IMG/VR virus record: IMGVR_UViG_3300033997_000243
Span: 62,001-126,000 of that record
DNA length: 64,000 nt
Direction: 5' to 3' (one strand)
Part shown: in pieces, positions 1 through 32,759 of the stretch
Numbering within the stretch: position 1 is the stretch's first letter
Layout: each line of letters starts with the position of its first letter
Made by a program: the position numbers and the translations under genes
Notes under the pieces: generated by a model
What the model was told of the DNA's origin: nothing
What the model saw: only the letters and a program-made list of their open reading frames with translations
The model's database searches: none

Positions 1-2
1 AT

Positions 3-119
3 GGGCAAATTGTTTACCGTTGGTGTCACGATTCAACTGGTTTTGAATGCAGCCAAGTTGAAAATCCGGCTTACGTAAGTAACCAACACGATCCTAAAAA
101 CATTATGATGGTGCGCTAA
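3..119 (+). CDS. 3' end of an upstream CDS (partial, ...GQIVYRWCHDSTGFECSQVENPAYVSNQHDPKNIMMVR*)
   Basis: Frame 3 is open from the window start to TAA 117-119, which overlaps the ATG of the next gene (TAATG coupling). Confidence 0.5.
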   Translation, partial: GQIVYRWCHDSTGFECSQVENPAYVSNQHDPKNIMMVR

Positions 120-1039
120 TGGAATTCAGATACAATTCAGATACTCCATTCCAATTAGGTGAATGGTTTAAAATAGAGCGTAATCATTTCTGGCATGTGT
201 ACTTAGATTCACGTATTAAAATTCGTGATGACAAAGGCGCTGTTGCTGTAGTTGATGAACGTACTTTGCGAGATCTTGTTGAAAAAAGCTTAATGCTTAA
301 TGGCGATCCTGCTTTGTTCGATTCTGTTTGGATTACACTAAACAACATTAAACCTGTTGCCATTGACTCTAAGGATATTGTTAGCGAAAGTGCAACATTG
401 AATTACAACTACCGTGTTGTTCTTCAACCTCCTGCAATTAAAAAAGCGCATCCATTAGCAATAGGTTTTCTTGAGGAAAATCTTGAACGCAGAAGAAATG
501 AATGGTGCTACCCATTAGCTGACATTGAGCGTAAGGCCGTAAATCAAGCTTTAGATTACACAGGATTTAAGAAGAAGATCAACTTAAATCATTTTATTCT
601 GTGTAAATCTGATGTAGTACCTACTTGCTTCAGTCGTCAAACCGATGCCTCTATAAAAGCGCGTCAGTTGCTTGTTCTGAACTTCAATCAACTTCAAGGC
701 TTACGTTCAGGTGCAATAACTTCAGGATTCCTTGCTCAAGTTATCACGCACGAGCTTGCTCACTTTTTAATGTATGATGGCATTGTACGTCAATCTCAGA
801 TGGAGCGTTACAAACAAGCTTTGGTTGCAAGACGTTTGCATCCAGATCAATTTAATCATGCAGGATATACTTATCCTTGGTATGAAGAAGCTTGGGCTAC
901 ATTGTGTGAGTATATGGTTCACGGTAAATCTGAACGTGGTTTAAGCTGCACAGATGGTTGGGAACTTGCAAAACAATACTTCGATAACAACTTTTTAATT
1001 AACGGAAATCCAACTGGTGATCGCTTAATTAAAATTTAA
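119..1039 (+). CDS. Putative zinc metallopeptidase (HExxH, gluzincin-like)
   Basis: VITHELAHFLM followed by WYEEAWA (candidate third ligand E). Confidence 0.65.
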   Translation: MEFRYNSDTPFQLGEWFKIERNHFWHVYLDSRIKIRDDKGAVAVVDERTLRDLVEKSLMLNGDPALFDSVWITLNNIKPVAIDSKDIVSESATLNYNYRVVLQPPAIKKAHPLAIGFLEENLERRRNEWCYPLADIERKAVNQALDYTGFKKKINLNHFILCKSDVVPTCFSRQTDASIKARQLLVLNFNQLQGLRSGAITSGFLAQVITHELAHFLMYDGIVRQSQMERYKQALVARRLHPDQFNHAGYTYPWYEEAWATLCEYMVHGKSERGLSCTDGWELAKQYFDNNFLINGNPTGDRLIKI

Positions 1040-1048
1040 GGAAAACAT

Positions 1049-1447
1049 ATGAAAATCAAAGTATTCGTTTCGCAAAGTTCGTACTCTTTGGCCAGACTTA
1101 AAGCATCTGACTCTAAATTCAGACAGTTGGCTGACGACAGATTTACTTCGTCACAAATCAAAAAACTTATGACCAAAGGAACGAAACTTCTTATGGTTGT
1201 TACAGGTGCTTACACACGTAAGGCTGATAACAAAGTAACTCCACAACTAAACAAATATACTCTTGTCATCAAAGAAGTTGAAATAGCTGGCAACGGAAAA
1301 TTAAAAAGAGTGTTGATTGCTCCAGAAGGTAAACATTCAAAAGATGAAATTAAACCTTTATCTGCGGCTGCTTTGGCAAAACTGTTGAACGGCGAAAAGG
1401 CTACTCTTAAATCTAAGAAAGGCACCAAAAGTGCTTCTCTTAAATAA
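1049..1447 (+). CDS. Lys-rich hypothetical protein with shared N-terminal leader (putative internal head protein)
   Basis: SD AAGGA; starts MKIKVFVSQSS; highly basic. Confidence 0.75.
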   Translation: MKIKVFVSQSSYSLARLKASDSKFRQLADDRFTSSQIKKLMTKGTKLLMVVTGAYTRKADNKVTPQLNKYTLVIKEVEIAGNGKLKRVLIAPEGKHSKDEIKPLSAAALAKLLNGEKATLKSKKGTKSASLK

Positions 1448-1465
1448 ATTCAATAGGAAAATCTT

Positions 1466-2293
1466 ATGAAAATTCAAGTTATGTTGTCTGAGAGCGCAGA
1501 TTTAACTGCTGCCCAAGAAAAGAAAATTGTTGTTGGCGGTACTTTTACTTTATATACAATAGTATCAACTAAAAAGACTCCACCAAGACCGAGCATTGGC
1601 TTTATTCCGAAAGAAACTATAGAGCGCTACAAAAAGATGCCTCCTGTTATAACAAAGGCGGCCACTAACTATCGTATAACCGAAGTGAATAGCACTAAAT
1701 CTGGATCAGTTAAATCCATAGTTGCTGTTGCAGAGCGTGACAATTCTCTTACACGTAAGCATCCCGGCAATTTATCAACTTTAACATTAACTAAAGCTAA
1801 ACTTTTGAGTTTAATCGGAAACAAAATAACAAAAGAAGATGTTGGAAGTCAGAGTATAACACTTACTACAAATTCTAAAGATACAACAGCATTCTTTAAC
1901 AAAACTGAGGCAAAAGACAAACAACGCATAAAAGCCTTAGATGAACAAATAGCTAAACTTCAAAAACAACGTGAAGAATTAGCTGGAGTTCAGAAAAAGC
2001 GTAACGATGCTATACACGATGCGGAATCCGCTAAGAAACGTGCTGAACTTAAAGCACAAGGCTATAGTTATTTAGTTGTTATTGAAGGTAAAGAAACAAA
2101 GAAAAAAACTTTAAGTGAAGCCCGTTCAGTCAGACCAAAGATCGGTGAAACCGCTTCGATTTTTGCTGTATTAGCAGGTAAACGCTCAAAGATTCTTACG
2201 TGGTCAGCTAAAGATCCTGTAACCAAAAGAGTCCTTAAAGGATATAATTGGTTCTTTACTTCAGCTGCTGCACAGAAAAAGTTTGATGTATGA
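1466..2293 (+). CDS. Lys-rich hypothetical protein with shared leader; central coiled coil
   Basis: SD AGGA; starts MKIQVMLSESA. Confidence 0.75.
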   Translation: MKIQVMLSESADLTAAQEKKIVVGGTFTLYTIVSTKKTPPRPSIGFIPKETIERYKKMPPVITKAATNYRITEVNSTKSGSVKSIVAVAERDNSLTRKHPGNLSTLTLTKAKLLSLIGNKITKEDVGSQSITLTTNSKDTTAFFNKTEAKDKQRIKALDEQIAKLQKQREELAGVQKKRNDAIHDAESAKKRAELKAQGYSYLVVIEGKETKKKTLSEARSVRPKIGETASIFAVLAGKRSKILTWSAKDPVTKRVLKGYNWFFTSAAAQKKFDV

Positions 2294-2330
2294 ACTTAAT
2301 GCGTTCGATTCCTACTATTAAGGCGGCCCT

Positions 2331-2933
2331 ATGAAAATCAAAGTATTTATTAGCTCTTCAAATAACAAACCTAAAAAAATTGGAGGCTCCAATTGGTTTG
2401 ATGAACTTTCAGACGAAGCTAAAAAAGAATATATTGAAGAACATCCAAATAGTCAGTACGCTAAACATCATATGCGTATGGCAAAACATAAGGAACGTAA
2501 ATCAAGGACTGGCCAATTCGCATCCGGCTTAGATCCTAGATTTGCAGAAGCATCTAAAGGTTTAGATCCTAATCTATTAAAAGAAGTATCTAAACTGGAT
2601 GACGATTTGCAGCAAAGTTTCGCCAAAAGATTTTCTGGCGCTATGGAAGAGTTTGGTTTGGATGCTGATAGTGAAGAAACAACTGCTTCACTGGAAAGTC
2701 ACAAAAATAGAGCGTTGAAAGCAAAGAAAGATGCAGAAAACGCAACTAATCCTATCGCCAAAAAGAAAGCTTTAGCTACTTTTGAGCGTGAACGAGATAA
2801 CTACAAAGAGTTAAAGCTTGCTCACCAGAAAGCTTTGGATGTTTTAAAGACTCCTGGTAAGTTGGATAAATTTAAGAATCAGCTTGGTAGACAGCTTTTA
2901 AGTAAGCTAAGTAAAGTTCAAGCGGAAGAGTAA
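2331..2933 (+). CDS. Basic hypothetical protein with shared leader
   Basis: Starts MKIKVFISSSN; WFDELSDEAKKEYIEEHPNSQYAK resembles a motif recalled from jumbo-phage virion proteins. Confidence 0.75.
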   Translation: MKIKVFISSSNNKPKKIGGSNWFDELSDEAKKEYIEEHPNSQYAKHHMRMAKHKERKSRTGQFASGLDPRFAEASKGLDPNLLKEVSKLDDDLQQSFAKRFSGAMEEFGLDADSEETTASLESHKNRALKAKKDAENATNPIAKKKALATFERERDNYKELKLAHQKALDVLKTPGKLDKFKNQLGRQLLSKLSKVQAEE

Positions 2934-2935
2934 GA

Positions 2936-3094
2936 ATGAAAAAACTCATGGTGGCTAATCTTGCTAAGAAAATTCCTGAAGATCAGCGCAATAAACGTCA
3001 ACAAAAATTAGTTGATGAAATTCCTGAGATTCATGCACGCCTTAAACAAAAAACTGGCCCCTTTGCCTTTATGCGTAAATCGAAGTTTAATTAA
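2936..3094 (+). CDS. Small basic ORF, 52 aa (MKKLMVANLAKK...RKSKFN), absent from the ORF track
   Basis: Translated by hand; fills the gap between 2933 and the terminator at about 3093. Confidence 0.6.
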   Translation: MKKLMVANLAKKIPEDQRNKRQQKLVDEIPEIHARLKQKTGPFAFMRKSKFN

Positions 3095-3113
3095 GGGCTT
3101 CGGCCCTTTTCTT
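3093..3113 (+). terminator. Intrinsic terminator with C(UUCG)G tetraloop
   Basis: AAGGGC-TTCG-GCCCTT followed by TTCTTT. Confidence 0.8.
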
Positions 3114-3124
3114 TAGGTGAGCTT

Positions 3125-3457
3125 ATGAAAATTCTTGTGAGTCTTTGTACAAGTGTAGACAGTATTCAAAAAGAAAATGGTAAACTTGTATACAAGGGAA
3201 TGACTTTCATTGATTTTGATAAACCCATTGAAATAAAGGATAAGCGCTACAAACGTGCGGTATTAGCACGTAAAGGAAATAATTTTAAACTAATAAAGTA
3301 TGGCCATGTTGACTATGAAGATTTCACTACTCACAAAGATCCTGAACGTAGAGAAAATTTTCGCAAAAGATTTCGTGGCATCTTAAAGTCTAATGGTAAG
3401 CCAGCTTATAAAGATAAATGGCAAGCTGCGTATTGGGCATACAACGATCTTTGGTAG
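3125..3457 (+). CDS. Basic protein with leader; DUF5754-like family (recalled from large DNA viruses)
   Basis: MKILVSLCTS leader; YGHVDYEDFTTHKDPERRENFRKRF...AAYWAYNDLW. Confidence 0.65.
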   Translation: MKILVSLCTSVDSIQKENGKLVYKGMTFIDFDKPIEIKDKRYKRAVLARKGNNFKLIKYGHVDYEDFTTHKDPERRENFRKRFRGILKSNGKPAYKDKWQAAYWAYNDLW

Positions 3458-3465
3458 GGAATTCT

Positions 3466-4143
3466 ATGAAGGTTAATATATTAATTTCTGAATCTGCTTC
3501 GACAACTCGTGCATTTAAAGCAAAACTTGCTGAATTAGGTTCCTTATTGTTTGAGTCAGATAATAAATTGATCAGGGAACTAAAGGTAACTAAACCTTTT
3601 GTTAAGACCATTGATGGATTAGCTTATGCTATCCGACTTGCACGTAAATCACACGTTGCTCAAAATAAAGTTGAAGAGTTAGCTACTTTGCTCGGAGTCA
3701 ATCCAGCACATATAACTTCTGCTGTGGATAAAACTGGCTATTGTCTCCACTTTAGCTCTGGTGCTGCTACCAAAGCAATTGCTACATTAAAAAGAATGGC
3801 TAAAGCCAAATCAGTTGGAGCACCTGCTAAAAAATCTAAGACCGCAGACTTCGGTTGGAATGTAGCAATCCAACAAATGACTCGTCAGAAAGAGAATATT
3901 GTTCAAGATAAAGGTCTTGAAGTTGCAGCTAAATGTAAACTGGCTTTTGCTGACCGCATTGATAAGCTTGTTGCTAAAAATACTAAAACACATGATGTCA
4001 GAAGTTTTAGTATGGAAGTTGTTGACTATCCACAAATGACAAGCACTGTCGGCACAGACGAAGTTTATATAACTGTCAAACTAAAGCTGGATCAAAAATC
4101 TCGACCTTCTCAGGGTCGTCCAGTGAAAAAAGAATTCAAGTAA
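3466..4143 (+). CDS. Basic hypothetical protein with shared leader
   Basis: Start moved from 3418 to ATG 3466 (SD AGGGA); begins MKVNILISESA. Confidence 0.75.
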   Translation: MKVNILISESASTTRAFKAKLAELGSLLFESDNKLIRELKVTKPFVKTIDGLAYAIRLARKSHVAQNKVEELATLLGVNPAHITSAVDKTGYCLHFSSGAATKAIATLKRMAKAKSVGAPAKKSKTADFGWNVAIQQMTRQKENIVQDKGLEVAAKCKLAFADRIDKLVAKNTKTHDVRSFSMEVVDYPQMTSTVGTDEVYITVKLKLDQKSRPSQGRPVKKEFK

Positions 4144-4173
4144 TTGGTCGCTCTAAAAAGAATTCAAGTAATT
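4127..4173 (+). repeat. 19-bp direct repeat AAAAAGAATTCAAGTAATT x2
   Basis: Copies at 4127-4145 and 4155-4173; the first spans the stop codon of the upstream gene. Confidence 0.85.
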
Positions 4174-4200
4174 AAATATTTTAGTTAAAGGAAATCAAAA

Positions 4201-5421
4201 ATGAAAATTCGTGTATTCACATCAACCTCAGCGCGTAAGCGTGATATTGTAGTAAATCAAGTTGGCACCAGTTTTGAAGTGTCTGTTGACGATAAAGTTC
4301 TGGTTAAGTTTACTGGCAAAGCAACACCTGATACTATTACAGAAAAATTGCAAAAGAAAGAATTCAATGGCGCAGAAATCAAACGTGTGTTTGCTCAGAT
4401 TGCTAAGCTTGGTAAAGCTGATTCCCGTGAAGTTAAGGTTAAACCTTCAGCTGCTGATTCAAAAACAAAGAAACAGCTTTTCTCTGATGCAACTGTACGT
4501 TTGGTGGCAAAAGAATTTCCAGAAGCTATAGCTACTTTAGCTCAACTGAATAAAACAGATCGTGCTAAAGCCTATGCCAGATCGCATCATGGCCTTGGTA
4601 TGGGTGTTCGGAATTTTATGCGTTCTAAGACCACAGAAAAAGCAGTGAGAAATCCTGTCACTGCCGACGATATTTGGTCAGAAGTTTTAGATCGTGCAAT
4701 CGAATTGAAACTTTATAAAGATACGGATGCTGATGTTTACCAGTTAGCAAAAATAACTGGTAATGCTGTAAAAGAGTTGGATATGGTTTTGTACAAAGAC
4801 GCAGATTCAGTGAAGAAATTAGGAGCCTCTATTGCACGTAGCTTGAAAAAAGCTTTCGGTGATGGCATGACTATTAAAGCTCGTGTACGTGAGCACTTTA
4901 GTCCGTCACCTAATGTACCTGCACACAGATACAATCACTTTGCTGTTTCCTTACCTATCAATATGATTACTGTAGGCGGCAACAATAAACTAAATATTTA
5001 TGTCGGTACTGGCATTGTAATGATCGAAGAGGATGGGCCGAAATCTACTAAGGTTACTAACCATAAACTGGTGAAAGGAACTAACGCAGAAGTTTTGGAG
5101 GCTATTACCAAGAATCTTAAGATCAAAACCAATACTGTTGAAAAACCTGCGTCAACAGGAAAATTCAATGAAGCAAGTCAATATGTTGTTGATAAATTCG
5201 GCAAAGATCTTAAGGCAAAAGGTATTGACTTAATACCTACACCTGGTGGCATTAGTTTTTATCATCCACGTCGCGGAACCGTTAAAGCACGTTTCGGAAT
5301 CAAAAATGGTAAGATGATGCACATGACTAAGTATAAGGCCAGTTTTGGTGAAACTTTTGACATGAGTAAACCAATTAGTAAAGCTGTTATCAGCAAAATT
5401 GTCGCTCCCTTACTTAAATAA
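4201..5421 (+). CDS. Basic hypothetical protein with shared leader
   Basis: SD AAGGA; starts MKIRVFTSTSA. Confidence 0.8.
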   Translation: MKIRVFTSTSARKRDIVVNQVGTSFEVSVDDKVLVKFTGKATPDTITEKLQKKEFNGAEIKRVFAQIAKLGKADSREVKVKPSAADSKTKKQLFSDATVRLVAKEFPEAIATLAQLNKTDRAKAYARSHHGLGMGVRNFMRSKTTEKAVRNPVTADDIWSEVLDRAIELKLYKDTDADVYQLAKITGNAVKELDMVLYKDADSVKKLGASIARSLKKAFGDGMTIKARVREHFSPSPNVPAHRYNHFAVSLPINMITVGGNNKLNIYVGTGIVMIEEDGPKSTKVTNHKLVKGTNAEVLEAITKNLKIKTNTVEKPASTGKFNEASQYVVDKFGKDLKAKGIDLIPTPGGISFYHPRRGTVKARFGIKNGKMMHMTKYKASFGETFDMSKPISKAVISKIVAPLLK

Positions 5422-5434
5422 TTTTTCCATAGGA

Positions 5435-5603
5435 TAAGGAGGTGATCCATATCTCGTGGTAACTACACCACGTTAAAGAAGGTAGTAGAGCAACCGCTCC
5501 GCTGCATAGAGTCAGTGATTTGATCAACTTTAACTGGAGATCATTATGAAGGCACTTCTTATCTAAACTTTATTTCAAGAGCATTCTTTTGGGTGCTCTT
5601 TCT
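5435..5603 (+). ncRNA. Candidate structured small RNA or leader element (16S 3'-end complement, pseudoknot, mini-ORF, terminal hairpin)
   Basis: TAAGGAGGTGATCCA 5435-5449; stem CGTGGT/ACCACG whose loop ACTAC is complementary to GTAGT 5482-5486; hairpin AAGAGCATTC-TTTT-GGGTGCTCTT 5577-5600. Confidence 0.45.
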
Positions 5604-5629
5604 AATAAGGTTTCCACTAAGGAACAAAT

Positions 5630-6286
5630 ATGAAAATTCGTGTATTCATTTCAGAATCAAGTCAAGAAGATGAAGAGTTTCAAAGAATTTGCGCGTTGTA
5701 CCTTGAGCGTCAATCCGTAGTACGTGCTTTAGGTGAAATCGACCGTGTGGTAAACGCCACAACTCAGGACGCAAACGAAATAGAAAGTGATAAAAGCTTT
5801 AATACTCGTAAACGAAATCTTCAGGAAGAGGTTGCAAAGTTTGATCTTGAAATCTCAAATCTCAAACGCAGAATTTTATACGGTACTTCTCCGTGGAAAA
5901 GTAAAGATAGCGAGTGGGTTAAAGAATTTATAGCAAAATGTTCTACCTCACTTATTGCCAATCCTTCACTAATACAAGCGAATAATGAAACCCAGTATAT
6001 AGAAGTAGCTTCAAAACTTCGCAGAGAGTTACTTGATAGTGTTAGAATGATCGCAAACTTTAAAAGCGAAAATATAGCTAATCTGTTATACGCTTGCGCT
6101 AAGTTTTATTTGGATATGTCAAACAGCGGTCAAAGTTCTTTATCTCAAGTTACGTATTCGGCTGCTGTAACCGAATTGCATAAAGTTCTTGAGTTATATG
6201 AACCTATTCTTATTCGTATATACAAACACGGCATTCGTAAAGATTACATGAAAGTGTTTGCTCAGGTTTTCAAGAATTTTGGTTAA
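5630..6286 (+). CDS. Helical hypothetical protein with shared leader
   Basis: SD AAGGA; starts MKIRVFISESS. Confidence 0.8.
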   Translation: MKIRVFISESSQEDEEFQRICALYLERQSVVRALGEIDRVVNATTQDANEIESDKSFNTRKRNLQEEVAKFDLEISNLKRRILYGTSPWKSKDSEWVKEFIAKCSTSLIANPSLIQANNETQYIEVASKLRRELLDSVRMIANFKSENIANLLYACAKFYLDMSNSGQSSLSQVTYSAAVTELHKVLELYEPILIRIYKHGIRKDYMKVFAQVFKNFG

Positions 6287-7193: not shown

Positions 7194-7230
7194 TAGGTAA
7201 GACAAATTAACCGTGTACAAAGGAACTCGT

Positions 7231-8931
7231 ATGAAAAAGCCGATTAAAGCCAAGGTTACGCCTGTGCATGATAAAAATGCAGCCAAGCCAAAAGCTAAGA
7301 AACCAGTTGTAATTCCGAATAGCATTAAGTATGCTGCGGAAAAATCGAAATCTCGTGTTGTGTTTGCTGTTCCAGGCCGTTACATTTTAAAAAATCGTCG
7401 TGCAACCTTCGCTATTGTGCGGATTGCAGATGACGTTAAAATGAGTCCAAGCGTAGCCACTAAAGTTTTCAAGGTTACTGCAAGTGATATGGATCTTACA
7501 CAAGAACAAATCTTTGCACTTGAGCCAATTGAAATGGATTCTTTGAGTGCTGCACCTGGTGCGAAAGTTTCTGGTCTTGACTCAAAGATGGGCAAGAAAA
7601 CACATGCACCAAATACCTTATCAAAAGGTTGGTGGGTTTTCCGTAAAGGTAATGACGGTAAAGTTGCAAAAGCTTTTGCTGGTGGCCGCATCAGTGGTCG
7701 TCGTATCTTATCTTTAATCGATCCTTCTCAAGCACCTAAGCCAAAAACTGAAGTGATTGACGAAACCAAAAAAGCTCCGGCCAAGAAAACTGGTGCTGAA
7801 TTAAAAGCAGCTGGTCAAATCAAAGCTTTGCAGACTGAGTTCAAAAAACTTGGTGGCGAACTTACTGCTGGCAAAGAACGCTTAACCACTTTACAACGTG
7901 CAACATCTAAAATTGCTTTGAAAGAAAAGCTGAAGAAAATAATTGCCCGTCGTAAAGAAATTTCTGCTGAGATTAAAGCTTTGAAATCTGGTGAACCTGC
8001 ACCAAAAATTAATCCTTCAGCTAAGGCTCCTGCCGTTAAGAAACCTGCTGCTACAGGAAAGATCACTAAGTCTGATATTAGTGCGTTACCTAAACGCCAA
8101 CAAACAGCTTATATGAATCTGAAGGAAAAAGGCACGGCTATTGTTCAGGCTATTAAAGCACTGAGAGAAAAGTTGACTAAGTTGAAAACAAAACCAGCTA
8201 AAGCCAAAGTAGAAGCTGAGATTGCTAAGCAAACAAAACTTCGTGATAAGGTTGTAAAAGCTTTAGCTGACTTCCATGAAAAAATTCGTAATGGAAGTGC
8301 AGGTCAGGTAGTTCCTGCTCATAAACAAAAACCTTCAAAATCACCTGAAGCTGGTAAAGCAGTTCCTCCTGCTAAAAAACCAAAGGCTGAGCCAGCATCT
8401 AAAGCTCCGGCAGCTAAGCCAAAAGCTACGGTTCCAAATGCTGAAGTAAAACAGGCCAAACAAGAAGTTAAAAAGTTGGATCAAGAAATTGATCGTGACG
8501 TTCAAACAATAGATCGTTTGAAAGACATGCTTGAAAAAACAAAAGACGTTAATCGTCGTAAAAAACTTCAGGCCAGCATTGATGGTCTTAACAAGCGTAT
8601 TGATTTAAAAGCTCGTAAGCAAAGTGGTGCGAATAGCGTACTGCAATCAAAAAGCAGTGAGCAAATTTACTTCCCTACTTACTCAGCTGCCGTTCAACAT
8701 GCCGTCGATGGTTTAGCTTCAAAAGGATTAGCCTACGAAGCTGCCGATTTTGAACGCATCGTCACACATGGAACAGCAAAACCTGCTGCTGGTAAAACAA
8801 CTCGCTTTGTGTTGCCAATTAAATCTAAAGGCGGCTTGATCAGTAAGAGCGCTAAAGGTTTAACTGTTGCTGTTTATCATGCAGATGATCGCACTCAAAA
8901 TCCATTTGAATTAACTCACTACGTTTCTTGA
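7231..8931 (+). CDS. Large Lys/Ala/Pro-rich (histone H1-like composition) putative DNA-condensing head protein; paralog of 8964
   Basis: SD AAGGA before ATG 7231; PAKK/PAAK repeats, coiled coils; N-terminal ~150 aa align with 8964. Confidence 0.7.
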   Translation: MKKPIKAKVTPVHDKNAAKPKAKKPVVIPNSIKYAAEKSKSRVVFAVPGRYILKNRRATFAIVRIADDVKMSPSVATKVFKVTASDMDLTQEQIFALEPIEMDSLSAAPGAKVSGLDSKMGKKTHAPNTLSKGWWVFRKGNDGKVAKAFAGGRISGRRILSLIDPSQAPKPKTEVIDETKKAPAKKTGAELKAAGQIKALQTEFKKLGGELTAGKERLTTLQRATSKIALKEKLKKIIARRKEISAEIKALKSGEPAPKINPSAKAPAVKKPAATGKITKSDISALPKRQQTAYMNLKEKGTAIVQAIKALREKLTKLKTKPAKAKVEAEIAKQTKLRDKVVKALADFHEKIRNGSAGQVVPAHKQKPSKSPEAGKAVPPAKKPKAEPASKAPAAKPKATVPNAEVKQAKQEVKKLDQEIDRDVQTIDRLKDMLEKTKDVNRRKKLQASIDGLNKRIDLKARKQSGANSVLQSKSSEQIYFPTYSAAVQHAVDGLASKGLAYEAADFERIVTHGTAKPAAGKTTRFVLPIKSKGGLISKSAKGLTVAVYHADDRTQNPFELTHYVS

Positions 8932-8963: not shown

Positions 8964-10007
8964 ATGATTATCTCGTTGAGCGTTTCGGCAAAGAAGCCAG
9001 CCGTGCCGAACAGTGTTCAGTATGTTTTGGAACAAGCTAAAGGCCGTTTAGTTTTTGCGGAATCAGGACGTTATGTTTTCAAAACAAGACAAGGCGATTT
9101 TGCTTTAGCCCGTTTCAAAGACGAAACTAAATTTTCACCATCTATGAATGTGAAAATGTTTAGCAATAAAATGGTTTCTAAATCGGAAGATTTCAATGTA
9201 AGTACAGAAGCTTACTCTGAACCTGAAGATGAATTGCAAGCAGAAGCGGCAGCTAAAGCACCTGGTGCAAAAAATAATGCAGCCTCTACAAAGATGGGCG
9301 TTAAAAAACGTGCTCCTGGAATGATGGCTCCAGGTTGGTGGCTTTTCCATAAAGACGGCGGTAAGGTTACTCGTCAGTATGTTGGCCCACGTTTAAGCGG
9401 AAGAAAATTACTTTCTCTTGTTAAGTCTGAGAGCCAATCTAATAATGGTAAGCCTGATACAAAAGAAACCAAACATGATATTGGAGACAATACTCCGGTT
9501 AAAGTATCTAAAGTAAGTGAACTTTATGTTCCAACAAAAGATCCTGTTAATGACGCAATCAAAGTATGGAAAGCCTTGGACAAAAAACTTGAGTCCGAAG
9601 GTATTCCAACAAAAGAAACTTTAGCTGCTGTTGATGCTGCTATAGCTAAAATGCAAAAGATGTACGATGTTTTAACTTCACCTGAAAACAAAAGCAAACA
9701 TTTAGGTGACAGTATTGAACTTAACTACTACCTGAAAGACCTGAAATCTATAAGATCTGAAATGGCTAAAAAACCAAAATTAGATGAAGCAAATAAAAAA
9801 ACGCTTGCTTTATTTATGAAGGCTAAAGATGATGGTCACGGAAACATTCAAGTAAATTTTGGTGAAGAAGCAAAAGCAAAAGCAGCTAAAACTTTAATGT
9901 CAAGCTTAGGTATTTTAGCTTACACTACAGGAATGAATAGAAGATACGTCAATATTGGCAAACCTGGACATAAAAAGCTTAGAGCAATTATGAAGCAATT
10001 GTCTTAA
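8964..10007 (+). CDS. Basic hypothetical protein with leader; paralog of 7231
   Basis: Starts MIISLSVSA; shares PNS..Y.....K.R.VFA..GRY and APGAK..KMG..GWW.F.K..GKV blocks with 7231. Confidence 0.8.
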   Translation: MIISLSVSAKKPAVPNSVQYVLEQAKGRLVFAESGRYVFKTRQGDFALARFKDETKFSPSMNVKMFSNKMVSKSEDFNVSTEAYSEPEDELQAEAAAKAPGAKNNAASTKMGVKKRAPGMMAPGWWLFHKDGGKVTRQYVGPRLSGRKLLSLVKSESQSNNGKPDTKETKHDIGDNTPVKVSKVSELYVPTKDPVNDAIKVWKALDKKLESEGIPTKETLAAVDAAIAKMQKMYDVLTSPENKSKHLGDSIELNYYLKDLKSIRSEMAKKPKLDEANKKTLALFMKAKDDGHGNIQVNFGEEAKAKAAKTLMSSLGILAYTTGMNRRYVNIGKPGHKKLRAIMKQLS

Positions 10008-10085: not shown

Positions 10086-10135
10086 ATGGTATACGGAATG
10101 ACACTCTGTATATGAACTTTAACAGGAGCCACACG

Positions 10136-12469
10136 ATGATCAAGACAAAAATGAAAGCCTCAAAACAGGCTATCATAGTTCATGGCGCAAGTGAGGCAGA
10201 GGCTATCGCTAAATATACAGCTGTTGCTTCTGGAGAAAGCCTTCAAGCTTTCACAGACGGTACAAATGAGTTTTATACTCATGCGTCAGCAACATCTTTA
10301 TATAATCCAGACACAGGAGATTTTGATCTTGATGCTTTGGACAATGGTGAATTTTCTGCTGAAGCCAGCGCTCGTACTGGAGCCGTAGATGTTTTCTACG
10401 GCGTATGTTCTGATGGTTGCGGTGAGCATGTTGTTGCTGACTGCCCTGTCACTTTCTGTCCTTCATGTTCAAGCGCTATGCCTGAAGAAGATGAAGGAGT
10501 CGATTTATCAGATGATGAAGATCTGGTATCGATGGAAGATGAAGAACCGGAAGAAGAAACTGAAGAAGAAATGGATGATGTTGAATACGAAGATTTAGAA
10601 GCTGAAGCTTCTGAAGGCATGATTGTAGTTTCAGGTGATAACTTAGATGAAGCACTTGAAAACTTCCGTGCCGTAGCTTCAAATCAAAGTCAACGTGTTA
10701 TTACTTCAGGCCATTCGGTTTTTGTAACTCATGCCAGTGATTCATTTGATTATGATCCATTAACCGGATCGCCAGACATCGAAGAAGCTGAAGCCTCTGA
10801 AATTACTATGCAGAGTGAAAGTTCTGACGGTAGCGACAACGTAGAAGCTGAACATTATATTTGTTCAGATGTTGACGGTTGTGGCGCACACGTAATCAGT
10901 ACCTCAAGTTCTGTATTGAACTGTCCTCGTTGTGCCAGCGGTTTGTTAGATCCGGCTGATTTCCATTCACACTCAGAAGATGATTCTGAAGATGAAGAAC
11001 TGGAAGCACTGTCGGCTGAAATCGAAGAACTGGAAAACGAATTAGGTATCTCAAGCGAAAGCGCTGACGAAGAGTTAGATGCTGAAATCGCTGCGTTACT
11101 TGCTGAATCAGGTGACGAAGAAGAAACCGAAGAAGAGGAAGAAATGGAGGAAGTTAATTATGACGACCTCGAAGCAGATCTTGCCTCTGATTTAGAATTC
11201 GAAGAAGAACTGGAATCTGAAAGTTCTGACAGCGATCTGGATGAAGATTTAGATCCAGATGCTGAAGAAGATTTATCAAGCGATGACATTCTTGAATCAG
11301 AATCTTATGATGAAAACGACGAGTTTGAATCTGTAAGTGCTGACGAAGATGAAGAGTATGATTTAGATGCTCTTGATCAAGAAATGTCTGCTTTAGATTC
11401 AGACGATATGGAATCAGAAAGTTCTGATGACATTGAATTGGATTCCGACATTGCCGCACTTCTGGCCGAATCAGAAGATGAAGAAATGGAAGATGACGAA
11501 ACTGAAGAAGAGTCCATTGAAATGGATGAATCTGAAGAAGAATCTGAAGAAGAAATCGAAGATACTGAATTAGATGACGAAGGTGACTACGGTGACATCG
11601 AAGGTCTGGATTTAGAATCAGAAAGTTCTGAATCTCCTGTAATGGAATTCGACGTCGATTTGTTATCTGCAATTTCTGCAACGGAAGATTTATCTGTTGA
11701 TAAATTCCATGTTGCTCACTGCGGTAAAATTGAAGGTCAATCAACTTGGACAGCATTCTATGGAAAACTTCCTGTAGCTATGGCGTCTGAGTCAAGTGTC
11801 GCTGATAAAGCTGCACTGAAAGATATTTTTGAAAGCGCTAAATTCGGTTCCGCTATCATGGCTCATGCGAAAGCTGAAGGCATTGAAAGTGCATTAGCTG
11901 AATTTAACTTTGAACGTATCAGTCCAGACCTTGATGTTGATGCTGTTGTGTCTAACGAAATCATTAAACGCAGCGAAAGCCGTGTTCGTGAAGTCGAGAC
12001 ACAAATGCAATCATACTCTGCAAATGTTCAAGCTGAAATAAATGCAGATATGGAACATCGTATGGATCGTTTAATGTCAGCATTAGCTACTTCGGCTTTA
12101 GGCATTAACCGTCATGTTTTTGCAAATGTAAGAAACCCAGTTGCTGATGCTCTGATTAGTGCATTATCTTCTGCTGGAGTTCGTAACGCTGACTCATTGG
12201 TTTCAGATGCTTTTGCTCAACACGGTGATCGTTACAGCGAAATCCTTTTAGGTCAAGCTCGTGAACTTCTGGAAAAATCAGAAGATACTCAAGACGAAAT
12301 TACACAACTTGTAGTTTCTGCTTCTGTGAATCGCGGTGGCTTAACAAGTGAAAGTAATACAGTGGAAGATCGTTTGTCTAACTTAACCACGGTTAAGCCT
12401 CAAACTCTTCAATCTGAATCTGCTCACAAACCACAAACAAATCGTTACCTGAGTCTTTTAGATTCGTAA
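10136..12469 (+). CDS. Prohead scaffold/core protein, extremely acidic, with two Cys4 zinc-ribbon modules
   Basis: Directly upstream of the decoration and capsid genes; long D/E tracts; CSDGCG...CPSC and CSDVDGCG...CPRC; SD CAGGAG before ATG 10136. Confidence 0.75.
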   Translation: MIKTKMKASKQAIIVHGASEAEAIAKYTAVASGESLQAFTDGTNEFYTHASATSLYNPDTGDFDLDALDNGEFSAEASARTGAVDVFYGVCSDGCGEHVVADCPVTFCPSCSSAMPEEDEGVDLSDDEDLVSMEDEEPEEETEEEMDDVEYEDLEAEASEGMIVVSGDNLDEALENFRAVASNQSQRVITSGHSVFVTHASDSFDYDPLTGSPDIEEAEASEITMQSESSDGSDNVEAEHYICSDVDGCGAHVISTSSSVLNCPRCASGLLDPADFHSHSEDDSEDEELEALSAEIEELENELGISSESADEELDAEIAALLAESGDEEETEEEEEMEEVNYDDLEADLASDLEFEEELESESSDSDLDEDLDPDAEEDLSSDDILESESYDENDEFESVSADEDEEYDLDALDQEMSALDSDDMESESSDDIELDSDIAALLAESEDEEMEDDETEEESIEMDESEEESEEEIEDTELDDEGDYGDIEGLDLESESSESPVMEFDVDLLSAISATEDLSVDKFHVAHCGKIEGQSTWTAFYGKLPVAMASESSVADKAALKDIFESAKFGSAIMAHAKAEGIESALAEFNFERISPDLDVDAVVSNEIIKRSESRVREVETQMQSYSANVQAEINADMEHRMDRLMSALATSALGINRHVFANVRNPVADALISALSSAGVRNADSLVSDAFAQHGDRYSEILLGQARELLEKSEDTQDEITQLVVSASVNRGGLTSESNTVEDRLSNLTTVKPQTLQSESAHKPQTNRYLSLLDS

Positions 12470-12503
12470 CGGCTTTGAAATTTTTCAGTTCTGGAGATAA
12501 ACC

Positions 12504-13205
12504 ATGCTTAACTATGCAAATACTCGTTTCTTCAAGACCGTTGACCGCGTTCTGGCCGACGGCGTTGGTATCAAAGAAGAAGGTTTCACTTTAGCTTTAG
12601 TTCAGGAAGAAGGTGAGTTACGTGCTCGTCTTTCAACTGGCGTTTCTGGTGAAATTTTTGGTGGCTTCGCTTGTTCAACAAACCTGCCAACAACTTTCTC
12701 AACTAAAGTTGTTGAAATTGCTGAACTGGATGATTTGACTGTTCAGTTAGATCGTACTCCACAATCTGCACAGATTCTGGTTAAAGTTGCTGGCGTTAAA
12801 TTAACTGTTGAAACTGGCACAGCTGCACCAACTGCTGATACTTCAGTTGTTCTGACTCCAGCCAACACTTTACTGTTCCACGGTAATGCTGCTGGCGAAT
12901 CAGTATTAATTCAGTATCATTATGAACTGTTAGCTTCTGAAGCAGTTGCTGAAACTGGCGATTACTTCGGTGGTGTAGGTAACAGTCCGGCTTCTGTTAT
13001 GGGTGTAGTTGGTGCTGTAATCGAAGGCACAATCTCTACAAACTTGTTCTTTGCTTCTGACGACTGGACTGGTGTTATCCATCCGAAGATGGGCGCTGGC
13101 GGTATGTTACGTGCTTCAGGTAATGGTACAGAATTAACGAATGTTAAAGTTGTACAAGTGCCGAACGCTGGTTCACCTTTCCTGACAGTTGAAGTTGGTA
13201 ACTAA
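12504..13205 (+). CDS. Head decoration/cement-like structural protein
   Basis: Lies between scaffold and capsid gene; highly-expressed codon usage; beta-rich; SD GGAG. Confidence 0.6.
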   Translation: MLNYANTRFFKTVDRVLADGVGIKEEGFTLALVQEEGELRARLSTGVSGEIFGGFACSTNLPTTFSTKVVEIAELDDLTVQLDRTPQSAQILVKVAGVKLTVETGTAAPTADTSVVLTPANTLLFHGNAAGESVLIQYHYELLASEAVAETGDYFGGVGNSPASVMGVVGAVIEGTISTNLFFASDDWTGVIHPKMGAGGMLRASGNGTELTNVKVVQVPNAGSPFLTVEVGN

Positions 13206-13252
13206 TAGTTACTGATTAAAACTTGAATCAAATTTTTGTGGAGAAATACAGT

Positions 13253-14347
13253 ATGAAAACCAATTTACAAGTCGGCGCTTCTTATCAACTGAAGAACGGC
13301 GCACCTTTGCACGATCTTCGTTTTGCCGGACAAGGTATGGCTGCACTTTCATCTAACGGTGAAATTAACGCATCAAGCAATGCAGATCTGTTAAAACAAA
13401 TTGGCCAACTTTTACAATCAGTATCAAGCGGTACTGTTGTTCAAGCTGCAACGCCTGATTCTTTCCTGTCATTATCTGCCGAGCAGAAACGTGATATTTT
13501 AGTTGCCGCAAAAGCATGTCCTAATAAGTGGGCTGCTTTAGGTGCTCACATTGCTGCTGACGTTCGTGAACAAGCAAGTCGTCAAGGTTTTTCACGCAAT
13601 CTGTGTGTGATCAATAACCTGAAGCAAGGTGAAACTCAAAAAGTTCCAATGCCTCGCCATCAAGCTAAAGCCGTTTTAGCTACTGGCCCAACTTCAATTT
13701 CTTACCAAATGATGCGTGATAAATATTTCACGCCACCAGAGTTTGAATTGAAAGCTGCTGTTCGCGTGAACAAACTGGATTTGGGTCAAGCGACTCACGA
13801 TCTGTTAGACCACGCTTACAACGATGCTGTTGAAGGTATGATCACTGCTGCTGACCGCGTGTGGAAACGTGCTGCTGATGCAACTGTAGGTAAAGCAAAT
13901 ACTTTAGCTGCTTTCGCTGGTGCATTTACTCCTGCCGTTATCGCTCGTGCTTCAACACAAATTCGTGATTGGAACTTACCAGTAAGTCGCGCTGTTATCG
14001 CAAACAGTTTTTGGGAAGATATTCAATCTGAAGGTGCCTGGGCCAATACACTGACTCCAGTATCTCAGTACGAATTAGTTATGACTGGCCGTGTTGCAAC
14101 TATCTTCGGTCTGGAATTAACTACTGACGGTTTCCGTCCTGAAAACCAACGTGTTCTGTCTCGCGGTGAAGCGTACATTGTTGCTGATAATGAATATCAC
14201 GCAACTTTAGGTTCTCGCGGTGGCATTGAATCTACTCCGACCGATGGTGCAAACCAAGGCGATACAACTAAGGGCTGGTTACTGTCAGAGGTTATGTCTC
14301 TGATAATTCCAAATACTCGCTCTGTAGTTAAAATGCAAAAGCTGTAA
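13253..14347 (+). CDS. Major capsid protein (HK97 fold)
   Basis: Start moved to ATG 13253 (SD GGAG); SRQGFSRNL..L.QG...P, ATGPT...FTPPEF, AADRVWK and TG.V.TIFG.EL.TDGFR motifs recalled from PaBG/Y3-type jumbo MCPs; position. Confidence 0.85.
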   Translation: MKTNLQVGASYQLKNGAPLHDLRFAGQGMAALSSNGEINASSNADLLKQIGQLLQSVSSGTVVQAATPDSFLSLSAEQKRDILVAAKACPNKWAALGAHIAADVREQASRQGFSRNLCVINNLKQGETQKVPMPRHQAKAVLATGPTSISYQMMRDKYFTPPEFELKAAVRVNKLDLGQATHDLLDHAYNDAVEGMITAADRVWKRAADATVGKANTLAAFAGAFTPAVIARASTQIRDWNLPVSRAVIANSFWEDIQSEGAWANTLTPVSQYELVMTGRVATIFGLELTTDGFRPENQRVLSRGEAYIVADNEYHATLGSRGGIESTPTDGANQGDTTKGWLLSEVMSLIIPNTRSVVKMQKL

Positions 14348-32758: not shown

Positions 32759-32759
32759 T

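What the first reader, a model, noticed from the sequence alone, without database searches (positions are those of the whole stretch)
10136..13500. S-E-S / S-x-S motifs repeated through the scaffold and capsid N-terminus match the leader end: predicted maturation protease site
Seen: the scaffold has about eleven SES tripeptides (QSESS, SSESA, ESESS x3, ESESY, SSESP, ASESS, RSESR, TSESN, QSESA) plus ESVSA and QSYSA. The capsid N-terminal ~75 aa has ALSSN, NASSN and FLSLSA. The same S-x-S-(A/S) ends the leaders (LSESA, ISESS, STSA) and recurs at apparent domain junctions in leaderless proteins: QSKSS before the C-terminal domain of 7231, RSQSS before the shared domain of 34345, and IVSESA in the 119 peptidase. 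Established: T4 gp21 and phiKZ gp175 cut scaffold, capsid propeptide and internal proteins at one short motif ending in Glu. Inference: this phage's head protease recognises S-x-S, a Ser-based specificity different from those cases, which would tie leader, scaffold destruction and capsid maturation into one code.
Basis: partly seen in the sequence, partly recalled or inferred. Interest (0 to 1): 0.75.

Follow-up and report, generated by a model that had tools for sequence, protein, structure and literature searches.

The report
Predicted Ser-x-Ser head-protease cleavage code
In this 320-kb jumbo phage the scaffold protein, the capsid protein's N-terminal extension and about twenty short protein leaders share one small motif (hydrophobic-x-Ser-x-Ser-Ala/Ser) that most likely marks where its T4-gp21-like head protease cuts; relatives carry Ala-x-Ala at the same places, so comparison supports the idea, but no cleavage has been measured.

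Summary
The 785-aa acidic protein upstream of the capsid gene has 11 SES, against about 2 expected. It is the only SES outlier among 383 ORFs. The same S-x-S-(A/S), with a hydrophobic residue at P5, ends about 21 N-terminal leaders genome-wide. It also lies in a low-confidence linker of the capsid protein, just before the part homologous to phage G's propeptide-less capsid protein.

The window starts inside the prohead protease gene. That protein's model matches T4 gp21 (Z 9.2) and herpesvirus assemblins.

Across 54 related jumbo phages (the PaBG/Lu11/NCTB/Erwinia/Dickeya group), the scaffold motif, the capsid site and the leader ends change together between S-x-S and A-x-A(S). In PaBG the capsid protein was reported to lose about 20% of its mass; the predicted site there gives 19%.

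- ORF 119 is a separate zincin, not the head protease.
- ALSSN and NASSN are not S-x-S sites.
- Isolated S-x-S hits outside the scaffold are at chance level.
- The capsid gene starts at 13253.

No cleavage has been measured, the scissile bond is not fixed, and only about four independent lineage switches exist.

The parts
1..119 (+). 3' end of the prohead (head-maturation) serine protease gene. The whole gene is genome 61325-62119 (ATG) or from 61292 (TTG), so it starts upstream of the window.
   Evidence: 42% identical to the HRDY3 'head maturation protease' (phrog_18299). The AF2 model has pLDDT 79. The model matches T4 gp21 5JBL at Z 9.2 and VZV assemblin at Z 6.1. Foldseek's top three PDB hits are all 5JBL. 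BFVD gives 59 hits, including many named prohead serine proteases. H131 and S188 are invariant in 26 homologues.
119..1039 (+). HExxH zincin-like protein (306 aa). It is not the prohead protease. It contains IVSESA at residues 87-92.
   Evidence: H211, E212 and H215 are invariant. There is a weak Peptidase_M48 hit. It has no similarity to the protease. Homologues occur only in the S-x-S-type clades, always directly after the protease gene. None is found in PaBG, Lu11, HRDY3, RSL1 or G001.
1049..6286 (+). Array of seven genes for basic proteins (pI 8.3-10.3) that are otherwise unrelated. Each begins with an 11-residue leader, MK(I/V)x(V/I)xxSxS(A/S). Starts are at 1049, 1466, 2331, 3125 (variant leader), 3466, 4201 and 5630.
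   Evidence: Each ATG has an RBS, and the leader Ser codons mix TCN and AGY, so the conservation is at protein level. pI values are. The close relative L014 has MKIKVFVSES(A/S) four times.
7213..8931 (+). Leaderless lysine-rich paralogue of ORF 8964. It has the internal extended motif LQSKSS (codons 8641-8658) before its C-terminal domain.
   Evidence: Cleavage here is conjecture.
8964..10007 (+). Basic protein with the second leader type, MIISLSVSA.
   Evidence: NCTB paralogues start MKIISISARS and MKIVSISAQ.
10112..12469 (+). Acidic scaffold-like protein (785 aa; the start may be the ATG at 10136). It has 13 SES or S-x-S(A/S) sites preceded by a hydrophobic P5. Complete cutting would leave pieces of about 3-120 residues.
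   Evidence: The order scaffold, decoration protein, capsid gene is conserved in all related loci that hold both genes. The PHROG name 'ATPase' has no support from Pfam. The PaBG homologue is not among the 14 major virion bands (PMC7412058 Table 1).
12504..13205 (+). Virion structural protein, likely a capsid decoration protein.
   Evidence: phrog_16710. Its PaBG homologue gp81 is a virion band. Phage G has a decoration gene in the same position, directly before its capsid gene.
13253..14347 (+). Major capsid protein (364 aa from the conserved ATG). Residues 1-75 (13253-13477) are the predicted propeptide. The mature protein would be 289 aa and 31.5 kDa, which is 80.4% of the precursor.
   Evidence: phrog_2522. 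M11 of the TTG-started ORF is invariant. The 282-aa phage G gp27 (PDB 6WKK) aligns from the residue before the predicted cut.
13469..13480 (+). Predicted maturation site S-L-S|A (F-L-S-L-S|A-E-Q), between residues 75 and 76.
   Evidence: The AF2 model has its lowest internal confidence at residues 61-75 (below 50 at 67-69), and a helix starts at residue 76. A small-x-small motif lies in this linker in most of 54 relatives. The homologous PaBG site predicts a 19% mass loss, against about 20% reported.
30917..41601 (+). Further genes in the window with N-terminal hydrophobic-S-x-S leaders: 30917 (FLSISS), 33787 (MRILISLSS), 37975 (MIISISAVS), 40847 (MKILISLSG) and 41338 (LLLSESA). There is also an internal LRSQSS in ORF 34345-37140 (codons 35353-35370).
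   Evidence: Residues 343-426 of ORF 34345, directly after LRSQSS, are homologous (E 3e-10) to residues 25-108 of a genome protein whose leader ends LLSLSA.

Best explanation
The motif hydrophobic(P5)-x-Ser(P3)-x-Ser(P1), usually followed by Ala or Ser, is the recognition site of this phage's prohead serine protease. That protease has the T4 gp21/assemblin fold, and its gene ends at window base 119. By analogy with T4, the sequence of events would be as follows. About twenty mostly basic proteins carry an 8-20-residue N-terminal leader that takes them into the prohead. After assembly the protease removes these leaders. It cuts the acidic scaffold at a dozen sites into small peptides, and removes the first 75 residues of the capsid protein at SLS|A. 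Shown here: the motif enrichment, its shared context, its positions, its co-variation in relatives, and the protease fold. Inferred: that the motif is cut, by this enzyme, and at which bond.
For: (1) SES occurs 11 times against about 2 expected. The scaffold is the sole outlier among 383 ORFs.
(2) Scaffold sites were picked only by S-x-S, yet 11 of 13 have L/F/M/I at P5 (background 17%, P = 2e-7). The leaders and the capsid site share this P5. P1' is A or S in 28 of 37 sites.
(3) The extended motif occurs 65 times in the proteome against 22 expected. Twenty of the 65 start within the first 22 residues (9.5% expected, P = 1.5e-6).
(4) Leader Ser codons mix TCN and AGY, so selection acts on the protein.
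(5) The capsid site sits in the least confident internal stretch of the AF2 model, directly before helix 76-88. Phage G's capsid protein, which has no propeptide, aligns from that point.
[quoted passage not shown] The homologous site APS|A predicts 18.8%, and ours 19.6%.
(7) Co-variation: own-clade scaffolds are SES-rich (11/1.6, 14/1.8, 5/0.5) with capsid sites FASLS|N and FASMS|N. HRDY3/Lu11-type scaffolds are rich in ATAS/AVAS/AIAS, with capsid sites IATAS, MAIAS and VIAS. Dickeya types have SES(S) and VSES; Erwinia types have SQS and HSTS. Across 54 phages, Spearman rho is 0.63 (P = 3e-7).
(8) Leaders switch reciprocally. This genome has 21 hydrophobic-S-x-S leaders and 5 A-x-A. The A-type genome G001 has 3 and 16, mostly MEM(M/Q)LALAA (Fisher P = 2e-5).
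(9) The protease's own N-terminus carries SxS-F in S-type phages and ATA-F in A-type phages at the corresponding N-terminal position.
(10) All 54 scaffolds have [SA]-x-[SA] in the last 32 residues, mostly as E/Q-[SA]-x-[SA]-[SA] about 20 residues from the end.
(11) The protease fold matches T4 gp21 (Z 9.2), then herpesvirus assemblins.
(12) Ala replacing Ser in relatives argues for small-side-chain pockets, as in a protease, rather than chemistry on the Ser hydroxyl.
Against: No cleavage product has been observed for this phage or any relative beyond the gel-level mass loss in PaBG.

The bare motif S-x-S is common (580 in the proteome), so context or accessibility must add specificity.

Only about 4 phylogenetically independent S/A switches exist. 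In 2-3 of them the scaffold goes the same way, and the other way almost never (mean 0.1 over random pairings). The sign test cannot reach significance.

The register is ambiguous. Some alignments equate S-x-S with A-x-A, and others equate it with x-A-S.

The protease has no sequence-level match to Pfam S77/S78, T4 gp21 or HK97 gp4. Its specificity cannot be read from the model.

A second peptidase-like gene (ORF 119) sits next to it.
Confidence: 0.7

Rival explanations
1. The motif is a cleavage site, but it is cut by another enzyme. Candidates are the HExxH zincin encoded at 119-1039, directly after the prohead protease gene, or a host peptidase with an Ala-x-Ala-like rule.
For: The zincin is conserved, with invariant HExxH. 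It always follows the protease gene and is found only in the clades that use S-x-S. It is not detected in the A-type phages or in RSL1. Small residues at -3 and -1 resemble the signal-peptidase rule (general knowledge).
Against: PaBG has no detectable zincin homologue, yet its capsid protein is trimmed by about 20%. A-type phages have homologous sites without the zincin. The leaders have only 4-6 hydrophobic residues interrupted by Lys, too short for Sec signal peptides. Scaffold and capsid processing inside proheads is the known task of gp21-fold proteases.
Confidence: 0.08
2. Cleavage follows the classical T4/phiKZ rule, after Glu. SES is enriched because the true site is hydrophobic-x-S-E|S, which reads as the T4-like pattern L/I-x-x-E.
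For: In 10 of the 11 scaffold SES copies a hydrophobic residue lies three positions before the Glu. The T4, phiKZ and SPN3US proteases all cut after Glu (PMC5694885). The protease shares the gp21 fold.
Against: Only about 6 of 21-23 leaders have Glu at the x position; the rest have L, T, V, I, Q, S or R. The second leader cluster (MKILVS[LTV]S[AS]) has Glu in only one of its seven leaders (MKILVNLSSES). The capsid sites of the closest relatives (FASLSND, FASLSNS, FASMSNA) have no Glu nearby. A-type relatives use ATAS or LALAA without Glu.
Confidence: 0.05
3. The motif is a non-proteolytic signal. It could be a docking or targeting element, for example a short beta-strand plus turn that binds scaffold, portal or shell. 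It could also be a Ser modification site. Under this reading the proteins are not cut there.
For: T4 capsid-targeting sequences act as targeting signals in their own right (Mullaney and Black 1996, cited in PMC10052503). The leaders alternate hydrophobic and polar residues like a beta-strand. A glycosyltransferase gene lies near the head genes in relatives.
Against: Ser is replaced by Ala at homologous sites in relatives, which excludes modification of the hydroxyl. A pure docking signal does not explain a dozen copies spread through an acidic scaffold, or a copy at the point where the PaBG capsid protein must be cut to lose 20% of its mass.
Confidence: 0.1
4. The pattern is a by-product of Ser/Glu-rich low-complexity sequence and of paralogy among leader genes, with no function as a motif.
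For: The scaffold is 13% Ser and 16% Glu. Several copies share the form ESES(S). The leader genes lie in clusters and could be recent duplicates.
Against: Block shuffles and the first-order expectation reject composition as the cause. No DNA repeats underlie the copies. Beyond the leader, the leader proteins are unrelated, and their codons differ. The motif type changes in step in scaffold, capsid protein and leaders in other phages.
Confidence: 0.03

Closest known systems
Phage T4 head maturation: gp21 protease, gp22 scaffold core, gp23/gp24 propeptides, and the capsid-targeting sequences of the internal proteins IPI-III and Alt
   Same: The protease has the same fold (Z 9.2 to 5JBL). The head genes are clustered in the same way, with protease, then scaffold, then capsid protein (for T4). 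Both have short (about 10-20 aa) N-terminal leaders on basic internal proteins, an acidic scaffold with many sites, and an N-terminal capsid propeptide. All of these carry one motif (T4 facts: PMC5694885).
   Different: T4 cuts after Glu (L/I-x-x-E). Here Glu is dispensable and the conserved positions are two small residues (Ser here, Ala in relatives) plus a hydrophobic P5. There is no sequence similarity to gp21. The protease carries an extra, invariant CxxC...CxH cluster. About 20 genes carry leaders, several times the number known in T4 (general knowledge).
phiKZ gp175, 201phi2-1 and SPN3US gp245 prohead proteases (MEROPS S80), with motifs S/A/G-x-E and A-x-E
   Same: These are jumbo phages in which many head and ejection proteins, the capsid protein and the protease itself are processed at one short motif with a small residue at P3 (PMC5694885, PMC10052503).
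   Different: In those phages P1 is always Glu and most propeptides are long (over 100 aa). Here P1 is Ser or Ala and the propeptides are mostly 8-20 aa. The capsid protein family is also different (phage G/RSL1/PaBG type).
Herpesvirus assemblin (MEROPS S21), which cuts scaffold at (V/L/I)-x-Ala|Ser
   Same: The fold is shared (VZV protease Z 6.1, HCMV 4.5, KSHV 3.3). The small P1 and Ser/Ala P1' preference is the closest known match to the motif inferred here (assemblin specificity is from general knowledge).
   Different: Assemblin cuts at two sites in its own precursor/scaffold. It does not cut the capsid protein or a set of leader-bearing cargo proteins. The similarity in specificity is an analogy and was not tested.
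Pseudomonas phage PaBG and the 'Lupandier' group (Lu11, NCTB, Dickeya JA11/AD1, Erwinia Alexandra/Yoloswag/Y3), plus Ralstonia phiRSL1
   Same: The capsid proteins are homologous (43-49% identity; RSL1 30%). The scaffold, decoration and capsid gene order is the same, and the protease is homologous. The PaBG capsid protein is known to lose about 20% of its mass, and several PaBG virion proteins are processed (PMC7412058).
   Different: I found no description of a cleavage motif, of the leaders or of the protease specificity for this group in the searchable literature. The window's phage is a distinct lineage: the best capsid match among cultured phages is 49%, while environmental contigs reach 57-73%.

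Membership tests
Prohead serine proteases of the assemblin / T4 gp21 / HK97 gp4 fold (MEROPS clan SH) | Assemblin-like fold | tested here: met
   AF2 model, pLDDT 79. VIA-align gives 5JBL_A at Z 9.2, rmsd 3.0 A, 137 of 165 residues, well above the next hits. Herpesvirus proteases 1VZV, 8J3S and 1FL1 follow. Foldseek's only credible PDB hits are 5JBL chains (prob 0.69-0.91, E 0.07-0.19). BFVD gives 59 hits at E <= 1e-3, including many named prohead serine proteases and COG3740.
Prohead serine proteases of the assemblin / T4 gp21 / HK97 gp4 fold (MEROPS clan SH) | Conserved catalytic His and Ser, in that order, about 50-60 residues apart | tested here: inconclusive
   H131 and S188 are invariant in 26 homologues. 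Their superposition on the gp21 catalytic residues could not be checked, because the tools give no residue-level structural alignment.
Prohead serine proteases of the assemblin / T4 gp21 / HK97 gp4 fold (MEROPS clan SH) | Sequence membership of Pfam Peptidase_S77 or Peptidase_S78, or similarity to gp21 or gp4 | tested here: not met
   No Pfam hit for the protein or for any of 26 homologues. hhalign against T4 gp21 and HK97 gp4 gives probability below 1%. There is no PDB sequence hit. Only PHROG 18299 'head maturation protease' matches. It is a separate sequence family within the fold.
Prohead serine proteases of the assemblin / T4 gp21 / HK97 gp4 fold (MEROPS clan SH) | Gene lies in the head-morphogenesis module | tested here: met
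   In this genome the order is protease, zincin, leader genes, scaffold, decoration protein, capsid protein. In Lu11, HRDY3, Alexandra and JA11 the gene lies 4-5 kb upstream of the capsid gene.
T4-type capsid-targeting-sequence (CTS) leaders | A short N-terminal peptide shared by otherwise unrelated proteins | tested here: met
   about 21 genes carry it, and their sequences diverge directly after the motif.
T4-type capsid-targeting-sequence (CTS) leaders | The leader ends in the same motif as the scaffold and capsid cleavage sites | tested here: met
   P5, P3, P1 and P1' are shared across 37 sites. The leader motif co-varies with the scaffold and capsid motifs in A-type genomes.
T4-type capsid-targeting-sequence (CTS) leaders | The leader is removed in the mature virion, and the proteins reside in the head | not testable with these tools
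   This needs virion proteomics. There is one indirect hint. The PaBG homologue of the leader-bearing 2022-aa helicase-like protein is 1969 aa, matching the 221-kDa virion band, and it starts with FTLNSLSA.
Glu-P1 cleavage motifs (T4 L/I-x-x-E; phiKZ S/A/G-x-E; SPN3US A-x-E) | Glu immediately before the scissile bond at all sites | tested here: not met
   Glu is absent from most leaders, from the capsid site of this phage's closest relatives, and from the A-type motifs.
HK97-fold major capsid protein of the phage G / phiRSL1 / PaBG family with an N-terminal propeptide | Homology to a solved HK97-fold capsid protein, plus an N-terminal extension beyond it | tested here: met
   phmmer to 6WKK gp27 gives E 2.8e-13 over residues 85-371 (TTG numbering). 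The phage G gene encodes only 282 aa. The AF2 model has pLDDT 82, with a flexible linker at residues 61-75.

The most novel reading that the evidence does not exclude
A whole lineage of jumbo phages (PaBG/Lu11/NCTB/Erwinia/Dickeya/RSL1-like, plus many uncultured ones) uses a gp21-fold prohead protease with an unusual specificity: small-x-small, with hydrophobic P5, Ser/Ala at P3 and P1, and A/S at P1'. This is nearer to herpesvirus assemblin or signal peptidase than to any characterised phage protease. The code is written on twenty or more cargo proteins per genome as 8-20-residue leaders. It has switched between a Ser dialect and an Ala dialect in step across protease, scaffold, capsid protein and cargo.
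Probability: 0.6. Interest if true: 0.65.

Novelty: new variant of a known kind. Interest (0 to 1): 0.58.

Why it matters
If the motif is the cleavage code, it gives a way to read the head contents of this jumbo-phage lineage from sequence. It would identify which of hundreds of unannotated proteins are packaged and processed: about 20 here, including a 2022-aa helicase-like protein. It would also predict the mature capsid N-terminus and how the scaffold is cleared.

It would be a phage prohead protease of the gp21/assemblin fold that does not need Glu at P1 and resembles the herpesvirus enzymes in preferring small residues. That bears on how specificity evolved in this ancient protease family.

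The Ser-to-Ala switch among sister lineages is a natural experiment in the co-evolution of a protease with dozens of substrates.

The short leader could also serve as a tag for loading foreign proteins into jumbo-phage heads, as the T4 targeting sequence does.

Tried and rejected
- **Complex prediction.** Complex prediction of protease residues 30-250 with capsid residues 1-110 gave no verdict (score 0.00). This counts neither for nor against binding.
- **Sequence searches for the protease.** Pfam, PDB by phmmer and hmmsearch, and hhalign against T4 gp21 and HK97 gp4 all found nothing. Only the fold searches linked it to gp21.
- **Homologue search.** The search for homologous proteins with the protease profile returned only close family members without Pfam domains.
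- **ORF 119 as the head protease.** Rejected: it has no similarity to the real protease, it is a separate HExxH family, and its SES is not conserved.
- **Recent tandem duplication of SES.** Rejected.
- **DNA-level conservation of the leaders.** Rejected, because the codons differ.
- **Independent contrasts.** The test on the capsid tree is underpowered: 4 pairs, P >= 0.25. The strong raw correlations are not corrected for phylogeny.
- **Literature.** I found no cleavage motif or N-terminal sequences for this group. The phiRSL1 paper of Yamada 2010 and Thomas 2012 on phiKZ are not held.
- **Near-identical DNA.** megablast of the region against cultured phages found no match.
- **Sequencing reads.** Read laying and the look-up of sequencing runs were not used, because reads cannot show protein cleavage.

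Full report
**What the window is.** The window is bases 62001-126000 of a 319.5-kb virus record with direct terminal repeats. Its major capsid protein (phrog_2522) is 43-49% identical to those of the jumbo phages Lu11, HRDY3, NCTB, PaBG and the Erwinia and Dickeya 'Alexandra/JA11' group. It is 30% identical to phiRSL1 and 22% to phage G. The finding covers three adjacent genes. ORF 10112-12469 encodes a 785-aa acidic protein (pI 4.05). ORF 12504-13205 is a virion structural protein (phrog_16710). The capsid gene follows. This gene order is conserved in all related loci that hold both the scaffold and the capsid gene. The capsid gene starts at the ATG at 13253, not at the upstream TTG: that Met is invariant in eight relatives.

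The acidic protein has exactly 11 SES.
- Composition predicts 2.1-2.2. None of 5000 shuffles reached 11, whether global or within 60-, 30- or 20-residue blocks.
- SSE, ESS, EES and SEE are not enriched, and SES is the commonest tripeptide in the protein.
- A first-order Markov expectation is 3.9 (P = 0.0025).
- Tandem Repeats Finder finds no DNA repeat that would explain the copies.
- Among 383 ORFs this protein is the single SES outlier (P = 1.6e-5). The rest of the proteome has 39 SES against 34 expected.

The enrichment is therefore a property of the scaffold. Isolated SES or S-x-S hits elsewhere are uninformative by themselves.

**A shared, longer motif.** I took the scaffold sites by S-x-S alone. 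Even so, 11 of 13 have L, F, M or I at P5 (background 17%, P = 2e-7). The leaders and the capsid site FLSLS|A have the same P5. Over 37 sites, P5 is hydrophobic in 34 and P1' is A or S in 28. The x position (P2) is E in 16, L in 7 and T in 5. The pattern hydrophobic-x-S-x-S-(S/A) occurs 65 times in the proteome against 22 expected. Twenty of these start within the first 22 residues of an ORF (9.5% expected, P = 1.5e-6).

About 21 genes begin with such a leader:
- seven in the array 1049-6286, plus ORF 8964;
- five more in the window, at 30917, 33787, 37975, 40847 and 41338;
- a second cluster of seven at genome 194555-198254 (MKILVS[LTV]S[AS]);
- several others, including a 2022-aa helicase-like protein.

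Each leader ATG has a ribosome-binding site. The leader Ser codons mix TCN and AGY, so conservation is at the protein level. The array proteins are basic (pI 8.3-10.3) and unrelated beyond the leader. This is the pattern of T4 internal proteins with their capsid-targeting sequences (PMC5694885).

**The capsid site.**
- S-L-S|A lies between residues 75 and 76 (codons 13469-13480). Cutting there leaves 289 aa, 80.4% of the precursor mass.
- In the AF2 model (pLDDT 82) the least confident internal stretch is residues 61-75, and a helix starts at residue 76.
- The solved phage G capsid protein gp27 (PDB 6WKK) comes from a 282-aa gene with no propeptide. It aligns from the residue just before the predicted cut.
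[quoted passage not shown] The homologous PaBG site APS|A predicts an 18.8% loss.

**The protease.** A homologue of the 'head maturation protease' of HRDY3 and Lu11 (phrog_18299; 42% identity) ends at window base 119, so the window begins inside it. It has no Pfam, PDB-sequence, gp21 or HK97 gp4 similarity. Its AF2 model (pLDDT 79) matches T4 gp21 at Z 9.2 (rmsd 3.0 A, 137 residues), followed by VZV, HCMV and KSHV assemblins. Foldseek's only credible PDB hits are the three chains of 5JBL. In BFVD it matches the PaBG, RSL1 and phage G gp19 proteins, and then dozens of named prohead serine proteases. H131, S188 and a CxxC...CxH cluster are invariant in 26 homologues. It is a conserved HExxH zincin that always follows the protease gene in the S-x-S-type clades. 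It is not detected in PaBG, Lu11, HRDY3, RSL1 or G001.

**Co-variation with relatives.** This is the strongest evidence. From 80 related viral contigs and seven cultured phages I extracted 54 distinct capsid/scaffold pairs.
- Own clade (57-73% capsid identity): scaffolds are SES-rich (11/1.6, 14/1.8, 5/0.5), and capsid linkers read FASLS|N and FASMS|N.
- HRDY3/Lu11-type phages: the top scaffold tripeptides and tetrapeptides are ATA, TAS, ATAS, AVAS and AIAS. Capsid linkers read IATAS, MATAS, MAIAS and VIAS.
- Dickeya types: SES(S) in the scaffold with VSES|H in the capsid protein.
- Erwinia types: SQS in the scaffold with HSTS|A or HSHS|G.
- The scaffold's S-x-S versus A-x-A excess correlates with the motif type in the capsid linker (Spearman 0.63, P = 3e-7).
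- In aligned scaffold C-terminal domains, S-x-S and A-x-A occupy the same columns. This happens even within the own clade (SYS versus ALA). All 54 scaffolds have [SA]-x-[SA] within their last 32 residues, mostly as E/Q-[SA]-x-[SA]-[SA] about 20 residues from the end.
- Leaders switch too. This genome has 21 hydrophobic-S-x-S leaders and 5 A-x-A. The fully fetched A-type genome G001 has 3 and 16, mostly MEM(M/Q)LALAA in a gene cluster (Fisher P = 2e-5).
- The protease's own N-terminus carries SSS-F, SES-F or SKS-F in S-type phages and ATA-F in A-type phages. This suggests auto-processing.
- The PaBG homologue of the 2022-aa protein (1969 aa) matches the 221-kDa virion band and starts FTLNSLSA.

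**Limits.**
- On a capsid tree the S-type phages form mostly one supported clade, plus a few sister-pair switches (L069 versus L065, L052 versus L038). Only four phylogenetically independent contrasts exist. In 2-3 of them the scaffold changes the same way, and the other way almost never (mean 0.1 over random pairings). The sign test cannot be significant.
- The register is unresolved. The scaffold C-terminal site, the protease N-terminus and the pair L031/L032 equate S-x-S with A-x-A, which puts the cut after the second small residue. Other columns equate S-E-S with (T/V)-A-S.
- Bare S-x-S is frequent (580 copies), so context and accessibility must contribute.
- No cleavage product has been seen.

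**Rival readings.**
- A T4-like cut after Glu (hydrophobic-x-S-E|S) fits the scaffold. It fails for most leaders, for the capsid site of the closest relatives, and for all A-type motifs.
- Modification of Ser is excluded by the Ser/Ala exchange.
- Cutting by the neighbouring zincin is unlikely for the capsid protein, because PaBG has no detectable zincin homologue yet trims its capsid protein.
- Composition or duplication artefacts are rejected.

- ALSSN and NASSN are S-S and are conserved in all clades whatever the motif type, so they are probably structural.
- IVSESA in ORF 119 lies in a variable linker and is not conserved.
- LRSQSS in ORF 34345 is better supported. The 84 residues after it are homologous (E 3e-10) to the segment that follows the leader LLSLSA of another protein.
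- LQSKSS in ORF 7213 fits the extended motif but has no further support.

**Comparison with known systems.** The system works like T4 head maturation, with a gp21-fold protease, targeting leaders, a multiply cut acidic scaffold and a capsid propeptide. It also resembles the phiKZ/SPN3US systems, where many head proteins share one motif. In all of those, P1 is Glu (PMC5694885, PMC10052503). Here the conserved positions are two small residues and a hydrophobic P5. From general knowledge this is nearer to herpesvirus assemblin (V/L/I-x-A|S), whose fold it also shares. I found no description of this motif, or of the leaders, for the PaBG/Lu11 group in the searchable literature. I class it as a new variant of a known kind. 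It is well supported by comparative inference (confidence about 0.7) and directly testable on cultured relatives.

Noticed in passing
window 119-1039: A conserved HExxH zincin-like protein is encoded directly after the prohead protease gene. It is present only in the clades that use the S-x-S dialect (own clade, NCTB, Dickeya, Erwinia). It is not detected in PaBG, Lu11, HRDY3, RSL1 or G001. Its role is unknown; it could be a second processing enzyme or a packaged enzyme.
   Followed up: partly
window 10112-10960 (scaffold residues about 20-125 and 170-280): The N-terminal third of the scaffold-like protein is an internal duplication of a domain of about 110 residues. Each copy ends in a Cys cluster that resembles a zinc ribbon (CSDGCGEH...CPVTFCPSC and CSDVDGCGAH...CPRC). 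This is conserved in NCTB, HRDY3 and others. The PHROG name 'ATPase' for this family has no support from Pfam.
   Followed up: no
genome 194555-198254, minus strand (outside the window): A second cluster of seven small genes, all starting MK(I/V)LV(S/N) and ending in S-x-S(A/S). The A-type genome G001 has an analogous cluster at 119200-130895 whose genes start MEM(M/Q)LALAA.
   Followed up: partly
genome 21489-27557 (outside the window); PaBG NC_022096 148541-154450: A 2022-aa helicase-like protein (phrog_21391) carries the motif FTSTSA at residues 9-14. Its PaBG homologue (1969 aa) fits the 221-kDa 'RuvB helicase-like' virion band and starts FTLNSLSA. The G001 homologue has LAGAL at the same place. 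A giant helicase-like protein seems to be packaged in the head.
   Followed up: partly
protein P0067: A 640-aa homologue of the prohead protease from an environmental contig carries intein domains (PF14528, PF13403, PF14890), so this protease gene appears to hold an intein.
   Followed up: no
L072:846-3506: An 896-aa ORF in a related contig matches protease residues 139-263 in its last 128 residues. This may be a fusion of the protease core to a large N-terminal protein, or an assembly or frame artefact.
   Followed up: no
protease residues 198-215 (genome about 61916-61970): A C198-x2-C201...C213-x-H215 cluster is invariant in all 26 protease homologues and looks like a zinc site inserted into the gp21-like fold. 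I am not aware of such a site in T4 gp21.
   Followed up: no
window 7213-10007: ORFs 7213 and 8964 are paralogues that share an N-terminal domain of about 150 residues (PNS(I/V)(K/Q)Y...GRY(I/V)(L/F)K...). NCTB and L013/L016 also have two copies. In each phage one copy has the MIISxS-type leader and the other may lack it.
   Followed up: no
L003, L004, L006, L008, L009 (relatives): A family-2 glycosyltransferase gene lies 2-3 genes upstream of the protease gene in HRDY3, NCTB, Lu11, Alexandra and JA11. I did not look for it in the window's genome.
   Followed up: no
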